The notes: generated by a model not told the origin, from the sequence alone. A stretch of DNA of 41,953 nt from Bigelowiella natans CCMP2755 (GCA_000320545.1 ADNK01000256.1:1-41953), one strand, 5' to 3'; numbered from the stretch's first letter, positions 4,649 to 6,551 are shown. Numbers and translations are program-made.

Positions 4649-5824
4649 CTATTGTTCTTCTATGTGAAAAAGCTCTCCTGCTGACATTTTTCTCCTAACA
4701 TCTGCGAGTGCGAGCTGTTTCTCTTTTTCATCACCAGAGTCGAGCGAGTTTCTCCACCTGCGATACCGAACCCCCAGCTTGTCATACGACACCGGGTTTT
4801 TCCACGTGTTAGCTCCACGCTTCATTCGGTCCTGCTGGCCAAGTACTAATGATGTGTCCTCTGAGAGCACTTGCTCTGCTATAGATCTCCAGAGTAGGTT
4901 GACACCGGGAAGGTTTTTTGTCCATTTCAGGCCGTCCATATCCATTGACATTCGGTAAAGGAGCCTGGTTTTCCCTTCCCCGCTCGGGATACAAACGTGC
5001 AGCTGGTGTAGATGGTTCTCGCACTGGTCGCACTGGAGGTTTATCGCAGCCTTGCCGATTTGCACGAGCCCTATCTTCGAGTTCACCATGCAAGGGATGT
5101 CGAAGGCCATATCAATCGGGTAGGGGTCCCAACTCCCACTAAGCATTTGCTTGGCGTGAAACTTGACGCTGTTGAATACAGAAGAGAGGATGAGCTAATA
5201 AGTTCCGAAATTTTGGAATTATGGATGCACAGGCTCTGCTGTATTGATGATGCGGTAGGAAAGACGTTGTCTAGACCCCCCCACCCGTGCATGTACGTTT
5301 GTGTGTGTCAGAGGACATGGCTGTTAAATAAGTGTTTGCGCACCTGTCAGGCACAGACCATCCTTTCGCGAAAGTGGATGTATGTGTAAATGGAGCATGA
5401 GCTAGATCCAAGAGGTTCTCCATCAGCAAGCCATGTTCTACAGGAACTTCCATCTCAAGTTCTGCGTGCACCATATATCCCTCAGGAGGCAGGGTACCTC
5501 CCTCGATCTCAGGGGGGGTAAGGCTCCCAGGGTACATCCAAATTAGTCCCTCTTTCATCGTCAGAGTTGTTTCATGGCCGGAGTCATCTTTGCATACAAC
5601 GGTGTCCTGGTTAATTCAAACAACAAAGTAAGCACTTTGGCTTCAGGATGAGAGGGGGAATGGGGTGAATAACTCTGATATGTGTGTGACAAGCCAATTA
5701 CCTTATCCGTTCGTGTAATTGAGTAGTGAATATCGAACATATCGAATTTCCTCGTAGAGCCAACAGGAAGCTTGGAGACGAATTCCACAGGATACCAGTG
5801 TTCTCGTAGTCCAGCTGATAATTA

Positions 5825-5860
<36 letters not shown>

Positions 5861-6551
5861 TTACTGATCATGCTCCCCGCTAGCATTTTAGTTATTTATG
5901 CATTAGAGACTAATTCAAAAATACCTTCTAGTTCTAGGCTGCTACGCAGCATTGTCTGGGCGTAGTTTGCCCTAGCAGACTGTTTCTCCTCCTTTCTCTC
6001 GACAACTTCTCCCAAGGACATGATCTTAGATTTTAGGGTGTCGAGGCCTTCTTGAGCATCTTCAAATTTAGCACGTAGCTCCTCGAGTACCTTCTCGCGT
6101 TCCGCGGCGGCAAGCCTCCCGACAATATCATCGCCCATTCCGATGGGCGCAGTCTTACTATTTATAATTTCCGAGTGAACCCGCGTCTTCGGGGCAAAAT
6201 TTTGTGCATCATTACACAGCGTAGAAGGGCCAACGCGTCCACCCACATTAGGCCTGCGCATTACAATATGTTTTTCAGACCTCTGCACTTTACGAAAACT
6301 CTTTCTAAAGCTAACAAAATGTTCCCATCCTCCTCTCACCTCGTTGCGCATGTTTCATTTTTGATTTATGATCTAGCTTGGCTTACGGGGTTTTAGTTGC
6401 TATGTTACCTGGAACGACTCGTGAACGATCTCGTTGTTAACGACCGCGACAGAATGGAGCGGGAAGACAGGTTGATGATCAGAAGAAGTAAGATTGCAGA
6501 GCCGAAGACACATGAAAGCAGACGGCTTCCCGTGATCAGACGGCTGTGCAT
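4649..6551 (-). CDS. CAO: Chlorophyllide a oxygenase, Rieske-less (CAO2-type) subunit, about 455 aa, bipartite plastid leader
   Basis: Exons 6551-6409, 6253-5925, 5814-5702, 5606-5344, 5168-4649 (1368 nt, in frame). CAO-diagnostic motifs: [96 protein letters not shown]. Hydrophobic N-terminus ([18 protein letters not shown]) followed by an S/R-rich stretch. Confidence 0.93.

What the first reader, a model, noticed from the sequence alone, without database searches (positions are those of the whole stretch)
4649..6551. Chlorophyllide a oxygenase with the whole Rieske [2Fe-2S] ligand region deleted: half of a split CAO
Seen: after [32 protein letters not shown] the spliced sequence runs [27 protein letters not shown]. 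The C-x-H...C-x-x-H motifs that lie there in plant/Chlamydomonas CAO are absent, and the intervening 95-nt intron (5607-5701) does not supply them when read in frame. The mononuclear-iron motif ([12 protein letters not shown]) and the downstream EQVLSED are intact and the frame is unbroken, so it does not look like a pseudogene. Knowledge: in Micromonas, CAO is split into a Rieske-only and an iron-site-only subunit that work as a heterodimer. Inference: this secondary-plastid alga makes chlorophyll b with a two-gene CAO, acquired from a prasinophyte-type donor or split independently; a Rieske-bearing partner should exist elsewhere in the genome.
Basis: partly seen in the sequence, partly recalled or inferred. 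Interest (0 to 1): 0.8.

Follow-up and report, generated by a model that had tools for sequence, protein, structure and literature searches.

The report
Iron-site half of split chlorophyll-b synthase
This expressed Bigelowiella natans gene encodes the catalytic, iron-binding half of chlorophyllide a oxygenase with the Rieske iron-sulfur loops cut out, and the Rieske-bearing half lies on another contig; a 2025 preprint already lists this two-gene arrangement for this species.

Summary
A five-exon minus-strand gene (CDS 6551-4649, 455 aa) encodes a CAO with an intact mononuclear-iron motif and PaO domain. About 46 residues that carry the CxH...CxxH Rieske ligands in canonical CAOs are missing. 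Transcript contigs from three studies are spliced exactly as modelled, with no extra exon. It is the only CAO catalytic domain in the 91 Mb assembly.

The predicted partner exists. On contig C1752 a multi-exon gene encodes a CAO-type Rieske domain with both ligand motifs (about 60-64% identical to canonical chlorophyte CAO Rieske domains). Its catalytic half is degenerate: both iron-binding histidines are lost and the C-terminus is truncated.

The window protein is identical to Bigelowiella natans model Bigna1|85514. A 2025 bioRxiv preprint (10.1101/2025.02.10.637544) already lists that model as the "Fe-binding" half of a heterodimeric CAO, so the finding is correct but already known.

New here:
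- Rieske-less CAOs also occur in Lotharella, Amorphochlora and B. longifila.
- A catalytic-domain tree and AU tests disfavour a Mamiellales (Micromonas-type) origin (p=0.024).
- A shared origin with a clade holding the Rieske-less Caulerpa-model CAO is not rejected (p=0.18).

Heteromer formation and activity are inferred, not tested.

The parts
6552..6746 (-). 5' UTR (minimum extent)
   Evidence: Transcript contig X1 record 1 reaches 6746. X2 and X12 reach 6677/6676.
6409..6551 (-). Exon 1 coding part. ATG at 6551. Hydrophobic signal-peptide-like stretch followed by a Ser/Arg/Thr-rich transit-like stretch (bipartite plastid leader, inferred).
   Evidence: Translation equals residues 1-47 of P0231. 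Junction 6409|6253 is in transcript contigs.
6254..6408 (-). Intron 1 (155 nt, GT..AG)
   Evidence: Skipped in contigs of X1, X2 and X12. A low-depth intron-retaining contig in X2 covers 6229-6381.
5925..6253 (-). Exon 2: linker and predicted long helix upstream of the catalytic core
   Evidence: Equals P0231 from residue 49. The AF2 model has a helix at residues 91-132.
5815..5924 (-). Intron 2 (110 nt) containing a (TA)16.5 microsatellite at 5826-5858
   Evidence: Contig record coordinates are contiguous across 5925|5814 (table 8). TRF result.
5702..5814 (-). Exon 3: start of the CAO core ([11 protein letters not shown]...), the first strands of the Rieske-fold remnant
5607..5701 (-). Intron 3 (95 nt). 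It sits at the site of the missing Rieske ligands and supplies no ligands if read through.
   Evidence: Skipped in all three transcript contigs.
5553..5719 (-). Site of the Rieske deletion (intron 3 included in this span). The coding residues ITRTDK|[18 protein letters not shown] replace about 67 residues of canonical CAO that carry CxH...CxxH.
   Evidence: Alignment with canonical and Fe-only CAOs. No PF00355 match.
5344..5606 (-). Exon 4: rest of the Rieske-fold remnant and the start of the catalytic domain
   Evidence: (VanA_C N-terminal match).
5382..5420 (-). Mononuclear-iron motif [13 protein letters not shown] (P0231 residues 258-270; His265 and His270 are the ligands, Asp262 the conserved bridging aspartate)
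   Evidence: These columns are invariant in 42 CAOs. The ligand roles are inferred from the Rieske oxygenase family.
5169..5343 (-). Intron 4 (175 nt)
   Evidence: Skipped in X1, X2 and X12. A low-depth retained-intron contig in X1 covers 5162-5341.
4649..5168 (-). Exon 5 coding part: catalytic domain with the PaO domain (4802-5104), the conserved Glu-Asp at 4856-4861 (P0231 E386/D387, probable carboxylate ligand), and the stop codon at 4649-4651
   Evidence: PF08417 E=2.5e-14 and 6.8e-13. Invariant columns.
4400..4648 (-). 3' UTR (continues below 4400; about 180 more contig letters lie beyond the laid stretch)
   Evidence: Contigs cover the stretch down to 4400 and run over its end. Raw RNA reads of X22 pile up at 4400-4885.

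Best explanation
The gene is the single CAO catalytic subunit of Bigelowiella natans (JGI model Bigna1|85514). It keeps the 2-His-1-carboxylate iron site, the PaO substrate domain and a truncated beta-sheet remnant of the Rieske domain. The two loops that bind the [2Fe-2S] cluster have been deleted. A paralogue on contig C1752 (coding exons about C1752:52113-55647, with a likely first exon near 51004) keeps a complete CAO-type Rieske domain. In that paralogue the two iron-ligand histidines are replaced (the canonical LAH...FTH positions read IAY...IRK) and the C-terminal helices are gone. In alpha3 Rieske oxygenases the electron passes from the Rieske cluster of one protomer to the iron of the neighbouring protomer. 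A heteromer of a Rieske-only and an Fe-only protomer therefore keeps one productive path. The two proteins are proposed to assemble in the plastid, accept electrons at the partner's Rieske cluster, and oxidise the C7 methyl of chlorophyllide a to formyl at the iron site of the window's protein. Shown here: the gene structure, expression, loss of ligands, uniqueness of the catalytic gene, existence and anatomy of the partner gene, the fold class, and conservation across chlorarachniophytes. Inferred: physical association, the electron path, enzyme activity and plastid targeting.
For: Gene model and mRNA. Identity with the B. natans protein P0231 (Bigna1|85514): all five exon translations are found exactly at residues 1/49/159/196/284. 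No Rieske domain and an intact Fe motif. Only CAO catalytic domain in the genome. The only other PaO hit is a distant Rieske + PaO-domain gene on C1791. Partner: Rieske hit over the Pfam cut-off on C1752; exons with WYP, CAHRACP, CPYHGW, MPST and DGLIW landmarks, all GT-AG and phase-consistent; 60-64% identical to canonical CAO Rieske domains. Its catalytic exons have lost the Fe ligands and give no Pfam hit. Fold: the AF2 model has pLDDT 87-98 over residues 160-260, and the top Foldseek hits are alpha3 Rieske oxygenases (7qwt, dicamba monooxygenase, GxtA, NdmA; E about 1e-11). Conservation: Rieske-less orthologues in B. longifila (94%), Amorphochlora, Lotharella and two further transcriptomes. 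Precedent: Micromonas CAO needs both halves (Kunugi 2013, as cited). The purified two-chain MpCAO makes chlorophyllide b in vitro (PMC9615114). The preprint lists Bigna1 85514 (Fe) and 89482 (Rieske).
Against: There is no direct evidence that the two B. natans proteins bind each other or that both are required. I could not obtain the partner's database protein, so no complex prediction or Rieske-half phylogeny was done. An alpha3 ring cannot alternate two subunit types perfectly, so the stoichiometry is open. Liu et al. suggest something like a trimer of dimers.
Confidence: 0.85

Rival explanations
1. The Fe-only CAO works without the C1752 protein. It would take electrons directly from ferredoxin or from another Rieske protein, such as the small Rieske-like protein on C1529 or the Rieske + PaO-domain protein on C1791. 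The C1752 gene would then have a different role or be a decaying duplicate.
For: Five other Rieske loci exist in the genome. The partner's catalytic half is strongly degenerate and truncated, which could be read as decay.
Against: The partner's Rieske domain is well conserved (60-64% to canonical CAO, both ligand motifs intact, open frame over 10 or more exons). That is not expected of a decaying gene. In Micromonas both halves are required (Kunugi 2013, cited). The other Rieske loci are PetC-like or mitochondrial-Rieske-like by their motifs, or carry Ring_hydroxyl_A or PaO domains, and none is CAO-like.
Confidence: 0.08
2. The gene model is incomplete: an unrecognised exon or alternative isoform supplies the Rieske ligands, so the protein is really a canonical CAO.
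For: Low-depth contigs retaining intron 1 or intron 4 exist, so some alternative RNA forms are present.
Against: The dominant transcript contigs in three studies join 5702|5606 directly with contiguous record coordinates. Intron 3 has no ligands and would shift the frame. MMETSP, EukProt and JGI proteins of the same gene, and of four other chlorarachniophyte sequences, all lack the region.
Confidence: 0.02
3. The gene is a non-functional relic and chlorophyll b is made by another, unrecognised enzyme.
For: Loss of a cofactor site is a common sign of pseudogenisation.
Against: The frame is unbroken and transcript depth is high. A diurnal B. natans RNA study lists chlorophyllide a oxygenase among co-regulated chlorophyll-metabolism genes (PMC5635652). 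All catalytic invariants are kept. The same architecture is conserved across chlorarachniophyte genera. No other CAO catalytic domain is in the genome.
Confidence: 0.02

Closest known systems
Heterodimeric CAO of Bigelowiella natans as listed in bioRxiv 10.1101/2025.02.10.637544 (Bigna1|85514 Fe-binding, Bigna1|89482 Rieske)
   Same: It is the same gene. P0231, which carries the name jgi/Bigna1/85514, contains all five window exon translations exactly. The preprint calls it the Fe-binding half and names a Rieske half.
   Different: The preprint detected the pair by tBLASTn and domain annotation only. It excluded split CAOs from its tree and attributed the origin to the Bryopsidales endosymbiont without a test. 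I could not verify that the C1752 gene is model 89482.
Micromonas pusilla split CAO (MpCAO1/MpCAO2; Kunugi, Takabayashi and Tanaka 2013, J Biol Chem 288:19330)
   Same: There are two genes, one with only the Rieske cluster and one with only the mononuclear iron site. Both are needed and are proposed to form a heteromer (as cited). The Fe-only halves of both lineages keep WYPV...DG.IW landmarks flanking a ligand-free stretch.
   Different: They are not orthologous splits by the catalytic-domain tree. Mamiellales Fe-only proteins form their own clade (100/97). The chlorarachniophyte clade sits with core chlorophytes across a 99/94 branch, and AU rejects joining them (p=0.024). Mamiellales keep a longer degenerate stretch and have an insertion after the Fe motif. 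Chlorarachniophytes have a clean deletion of about 46 residues.
Split CAO reported for Caulerpa lentillifera (Bryopsidales), and unnamed Rieske-dead relatives
   Same: These Fe-only proteins have deleted (P0217, P0204) or ligand-substituted (P0195, P0219, P0225) Rieske regions. A clade of these with the chlorarachniophyte proteins is not rejected (delta lnL 0.42, AU p=0.18). That is compatible with inheritance from a Bryopsidales-like endosymbiont.
   Different: The free tree leaves the relation unresolved (polytomy). The deletion borders differ. Bryopsis sp. KO-2023 (P0188), of the same order, has a canonical CAO with both motifs. P0217 is named only g8266.t1 by EukProt. I equate it with Caulerpa only because the preprint lists that model name for Caulerpa.
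Canonical single-chain CAO (Arabidopsis, Chlamydomonas, Prochlorothrix)
   Same: About 40-50% identity overall and 53-60% over exon 5. It has the same Fe motif, PaO domain and C-terminal [13 protein letters not shown] helix.
   Different: The canonical enzyme carries the Rieske cluster and the iron site in one chain and forms a homotrimer (PhCAO). The plant A/B regulatory domains and degron are absent here.
NdmC/NdmD of Pseudomonas putida CBB5 (my own knowledge, not tested here)
   Same: It is a Rieske-type oxygenase catalytic subunit that lacks its own Rieske domain and receives electrons from a Rieske cluster carried on a separate polypeptide. NdmA and NdmB of the same system are among the top fold matches.
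   Different: In that system the Rieske domain is fused to the reductase, not carried on a paralogue of the oxygenase. It is unrelated in substrate and lineage.

Membership tests
Chlorophyllide a oxygenase (CAO), catalytic domain | PaO domain (PF08417) following a VanA_C-type catalytic start | tested here: met
   PF08417 E=2.5e-14 on exon 5 and 1.6e-13 on P0231. PF19112 is over its cut-off.
Chlorophyllide a oxygenase (CAO), catalytic domain | Mononuclear-iron motif (E/N-x3-D-x2-H-x4-H) plus a downstream conserved acidic ligand | tested here: met
   [13 protein letters not shown] is present. N259, D262, H265, H270, E386 and D387 lie in columns invariant across 42 CAOs.
Chlorophyllide a oxygenase (CAO), catalytic domain | Rieske [2Fe-2S] ligands CxH...CxxH in the same chain | tested here: not met
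   Absent from the exons, from intron 3 and from the mRNA. No PF00355 match at E<=0.1. Supplied in trans by the C1752 gene.
Chlorophyllide a oxygenase (CAO), catalytic domain | Groups with CAO rather than with PAO, TIC55 or other Rieske oxygenases | tested here: met
   All best database hits are CAOs at 53-60% identity. It is nested among chlorophyte CAOs in the tree. The only other PaO-domain locus in the genome (C1791) matches exon 4 at only E=0.3.
Chlorophyllide a oxygenase (CAO), catalytic domain | Converts chlorophyllide a to chlorophyllide b | not testable with these tools
   Needs an enzyme assay or complementation.
Two-gene (heteromeric) CAO | One gene with only the Fe site and a second CAO paralogue with only the Rieske site, with no full-length CAO in the genome | tested here: met
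   Window gene (Fe only) and C1752 gene (Rieske only, Fe ligands lost). No other CAO catalytic domain.
Two-gene (heteromeric) CAO | Both halves expressed | tested here: inconclusive
   The Fe half is clearly expressed. The preprint's model name for the Rieske half (estExt_...) hints at EST support.
Two-gene (heteromeric) CAO | The two proteins bind and both are needed for activity | not tested
   No complex job was sent.
Mamiellophyceae-type split CAO (orthology with MpCAO) | The Fe-only half falls inside or sister to the Mamiellales Fe-only clade | tested here: not met
   Separated by a 99/94 branch. AU test of a joint clade gives delta lnL 16.1, p=0.024. All Rieske-dead rows as one clade give p=0.013.
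Alpha3-type Rieske non-heme iron oxygenase fold | Rieske-domain beta sheets followed by a helix-grip catalytic domain | tested here: met
   AF2 model mean pLDDT 75.5, with residues 160-260 at 87-98. Foldseek probability 1.00 to 7qwt, 3gob, 6wnc and 6icq, with TM (target-normalised) 0.55-0.59. The cluster-binding loops are absent.

The most novel reading that the evidence does not exclude
CAO was split into Rieske-only and Fe-only paralogues at least twice independently. One split was in Mamiellophyceae. The other was in an ulvophyte (Bryopsidales-like) lineage, whose split enzyme was then carried into all chlorarachniophytes by secondary endosymbiosis. On this reading the ulvophyte-type clade still shows stages of decay of the Fe-only half: ligand substitutions only (P0195, P0219, P0225), partial deletion (P0217, P0204), and clean excision (chlorarachniophytes). 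That would make CAO a repeatable case of subfunctionalisation, made possible because electron transfer in Rieske oxygenases runs between protomers.
Probability: 0.55. Interest if true: 0.4.

Novelty: already known. Interest (0 to 1): 0.25.

Why it matters
Chlorophyll b synthesis sets antenna size and composition in all green plastids, and CAO is its only known enzyme. A naturally split CAO shows that the Rieske-to-iron electron path runs between protomers. It also offers a simpler system for dissecting or engineering that path. For chlorarachniophytes, the split enzyme is a trait that can help identify the green-algal donor of their plastid. For this species the two-gene arrangement is already listed in a 2025 preprint. 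The value added here is confirmation at transcript level, the location and anatomy of the partner, and a first statistical test pointing away from a Micromonas-type origin.

Tried and rejected
1. Exhaustive representative search with the partner's 87-aa catalytic exon (L013:7076-7336) returned three hits, all long multi-stretch proteins at 32-35% identity that I take for low-complexity matches, and no orthologue. This was a poor choice of query.
2. The third word search, with the Bryopsis CAO Rieske region (P0188:176-284), returned canonical CAOs. Its few 'Rieske-only' entries proved to be mis-called canonical genes with intron read-through, not true Rieske-only halves. No database id for the partner was obtained.
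3. Because of that, no heterodimer prediction, no Rieske-half phylogeny and no check of model Bigna1|89482 were possible. All searches used single exons by reference or database proteins (P0208, P0231) that the tools returned.
4. A PDB sequence search with P0231 found nothing at E<=0.01. Only the fold search worked.
5. Kunugi 2013 (PMC3707637) and Curtis 2012 (Nature) are not held. What I say about them rests on how the held papers cite them.
6. Scan-findings look-ups gave only the same first-reader note.
8. A clade of chlorarachniophytes with only the three Caulerpa-like deletion forms was rejected (p=0.0014). The reason is that those forms are firmly tied to three ligand-substituted forms. 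The proper test with the whole clade was not rejected. That group was named after seeing the tree.

Full report
**What is in the sequence**

On the minus strand between 6551 and 4649 lies a five-exon gene. The exons are 6551-6409, 6253-5925, 5814-5702, 5606-5344 and 5168-4649. All introns are GT..AG, and the CDS is 1368 nt, or 455 codons less the stop.

- Exon 3 opens the conserved CAO core ([11 protein letters not shown]...) and ends ...ITRTDK.
- Exon 4 continues [27 protein letters not shown] and runs into [13 protein letters not shown].
- Exon 5 carries the PaO domain and ends with the CAO-typical [13 protein letters not shown] helix.

Pfam sees VanA_C and PaO but no Rieske domain. This holds exon by exon and on the full database protein. 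Intron 3 (95 nt) has no cysteine when read in frame and would shift the frame. Against canonical CAOs, the stretch between WV.FR and DG.IW is 21 residues instead of 67. About 46 residues, including both CxH and CxxH, are gone.

**Is the model the real mRNA?**

Transcript contigs of about 2 kb from three runs in three different studies (k-mer depth 111, 500 and 635) lie on the window as five pieces. Their borders are exactly these exon borders, and their record coordinates are contiguous, so nothing is inserted at 5702|5606. Only low-depth contigs (about 5) retain intron 1 or intron 4. Raw RNA reads of a 2026 library pile up over the 3' end.

**Is there another CAO?**

The window's assembly has 91.4 Mb in 3736 contigs. 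It contains one CAO catalytic domain, this one. The only other PaO hit is a distant gene on C1791 that carries a Rieske and a PaO domain. The second refutation condition, a full-length CAO elsewhere, is also not met.

**The partner**

A Pfam Rieske scan of the genome gave six loci. By their motifs and domains, five are not CAO-like:

- one resembles plastid PetC;
- one resembles the mitochondrial Rieske protein;
- one is the Rieske + PaO-domain gene on C1791;
- one is an intronless Ring_hydroxyl_A oxygenase;
- one is a small Rieske-like protein.

The sixth, on C1752, is CAO-like. On locus L013 (C1752:48000-57999) I read eleven coding pieces, all with AG/GT borders and matching phases. In order they are:

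- a coiled segment and a 28-nt micro-exon;
- GHWYPAYFSSNLPQ;
- ...ELFGRPWVLFRDE;
- GDVGCIHDQCAHRACPLSL;
- KVVGGTVECPYHGWKFDQKGDCK;
- AMPSTRMCKGISVDSLP;
- IEEKDGLIWLWNDG...

Three further exons follow that are only faintly CAO-like. In these, the canonical LAH...FTH positions read IAY...IRK, so both iron histidines are lost. The protein stops shortly after a remnant RLLYRMS, before the GQQDR...YRRWRN helices.

The Rieske exons are 60-64% identical to canonical chlorophyte CAO Rieske domains (for example 71/114 to P0264). A likely first exon upstream encodes a hydrophobic signal-like start followed by a Ser/Thr/Ala/Arg-rich stretch.

**Which organism, and is it known?**

A word search with a Mamiellales-like fragment returned P0208, which matches the window protein from residue 51 on. 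Its 90% cluster contains P0231, a 455-aa protein named EukProt Bigelowiella_natans P015830 = jgi/Bigna1/85514. P0231 holds all five exon translations exactly, at residues 1, 49, 159, 196 and 284. The B. longifila orthologue is 94% identical. The window is therefore B. natans.

The preprint bioRxiv 10.1101/2025.02.10.637544 lists Bigna1|85514 as 'Fe-binding domain' and Bigna1|89482 as 'Rieske domain' of a heterodimeric CAO. It lists the same arrangement for Caulerpa lentillifera, Chloropicon primus and all Mamiellophyceae it sampled, and it suggests that B. natans obtained it from its Bryopsidales-like endosymbiont. The founding case is Micromonas (Kunugi 2013, cited). The two-chain Micromonas enzyme was purified and makes chlorophyllide b with VanB/NADPH (PMC9615114). 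The finding is therefore right but already in the literature.

**How it most likely works**

An AlphaFold2 model of P0231, built on an alignment of 42 CAOs, is confident over residues 160-260 (pLDDT 87-98) and over most of the catalytic domain. It shows six short strands where the Rieske domain would be, followed by the helix-grip catalytic domain. Foldseek places it with alpha3 Rieske oxygenases: guaiacol O-demethylase 7qwt, dicamba monooxygenase, GxtA, NdmA and carbazole dioxygenase.

In that class the electron goes from the Rieske cluster of one protomer to the iron of the next, through a conserved aspartate. That aspartate is kept here as D262, in a column invariant across the alignment. 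The anatomy is reciprocal:

- The Fe-only chain keeps a Rieske-fold stump.
- The Rieske-only chain keeps a dead catalytic domain.

This reciprocal pattern fits two paralogues that still pack like neighbouring protomers, with a single productive interface. The association, stoichiometry and activity are inferred by analogy with Micromonas. All searches used single exons by reference or proteins that the databases returned.

**Origin**

Rieske-less CAOs also occur in Lotharella globosa, Amorphochlora amoebiformis, B. longifila and two unnamed transcriptome proteins. All have the same clean deletion.

I built a careful ML tree of the catalytic domain only, with 44 rows and 236 columns and the Rieske columns left out. 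It shows:

- a Mamiellales Fe-only clade (100/97);
- across a 99/94 branch, a clade holding Pyramimonas and the core-chlorophyte canonical CAOs;
- within that clade, the chlorarachniophyte Fe-only clade (100/100);
- also within it, a clade (100/99) of the Caulerpa-model protein, its close relatives and three unnamed proteins.

On inspection the Rieske regions of those three unnamed proteins are full-length but have substituted ligands (CAV, CAD and CLYG).

| AU test: rows held as one clade | p-AU |
|---|---|
| Chlorarachniophytes + Mamiellales | 0.024 |
| All Rieske-dead rows | 0.013 |
| Chlorarachniophytes + whole Caulerpa-type clade | 0.18 (delta lnL 0.42) |

The last test is not a rejection. 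Its group was defined after seeing the tree, and a non-rejection does not show a clade.

A split independent of Mamiellales, possibly shared with Bryopsidales, is favoured. One caveat is that Bryopsis sp. KO-2023 has a canonical CAO with both motifs, so the state within Bryopsidales is mixed. A tree of the Rieske halves is needed to settle this.

**Verdict**

Novelty is 'already known' for this species.

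Noticed in passing
G000:C2786 (L002:682-2022, minus strand): An intronless 447-aa open frame has a Rieske domain (PF00355) and a Ring_hydroxyl_A catalytic domain (PF00848). This is a bacterial-type ring-hydroxylating oxygenase alpha subunit in an intron-rich eukaryotic assembly. 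It may be a horizontal transfer or a contaminant contig.
   Followed up: partly
G000:C1529 (L005:1051-1668, plus strand): A small Rieske-like protein has CPH...CSQH ligands after a leader-like N-terminus (PF00355, E=5.5e-8). Its function is unknown. In principle it is an alternative electron donor.
   Followed up: no
window 5826-5858: A perfect (TA)16.5 microsatellite lies inside CAO intron 2. The read tool skipped this repeat.
   Followed up: yes
window 5162-5341 and 6229-6381: Low-depth transcript contigs retain intron 4 (run X1, depth 4.8) or intron 1 (run X2, depth 4.6), beside the fully spliced form at depth 111-500. The MMETSP isoform P0230 (402 aa) lacks the exact exon 5.
   Followed up: partly
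Preprint Supplementary Table S1 versus P0217 (EukProt g8266.t1): The preprint labels Caulerpa model g8266.t1 'Rieske domain' and g2978.t1 'Fe-binding domain'. The EukProt protein named g8266.t1 has the Fe motif and no Rieske ligands, so the labels may be swapped.
   Followed up: partly
P0195, P0219, P0225 (unnamed ENA/JGI proteins); P0193 (Logan, run ERR1711959): These CAOs have an intact Fe site and a full-length Rieske region, but one ligand is substituted (CAV, CAD or CLYG), or in P0193 the region is scrambled. They may be intermediate stages of Rieske loss. Three of them group with the Caulerpa-model Fe-only proteins at 100/99 support.
   Followed up: partly
P0188 (Bryopsis sp. KO-2023): Bryopsis has a canonical CAO with both motifs, although the preprint reports Caulerpa, of the same order, as split. 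The state within Bryopsidales is therefore not uniform.
   Followed up: no
window 12660-16883 and 20761-21540: Other first-reader notes exist on this window: a carbonic-anhydrase-like protein with replaced metal ligands, and a TpA-depleted tract. I did not examine either.
   Followed up: no
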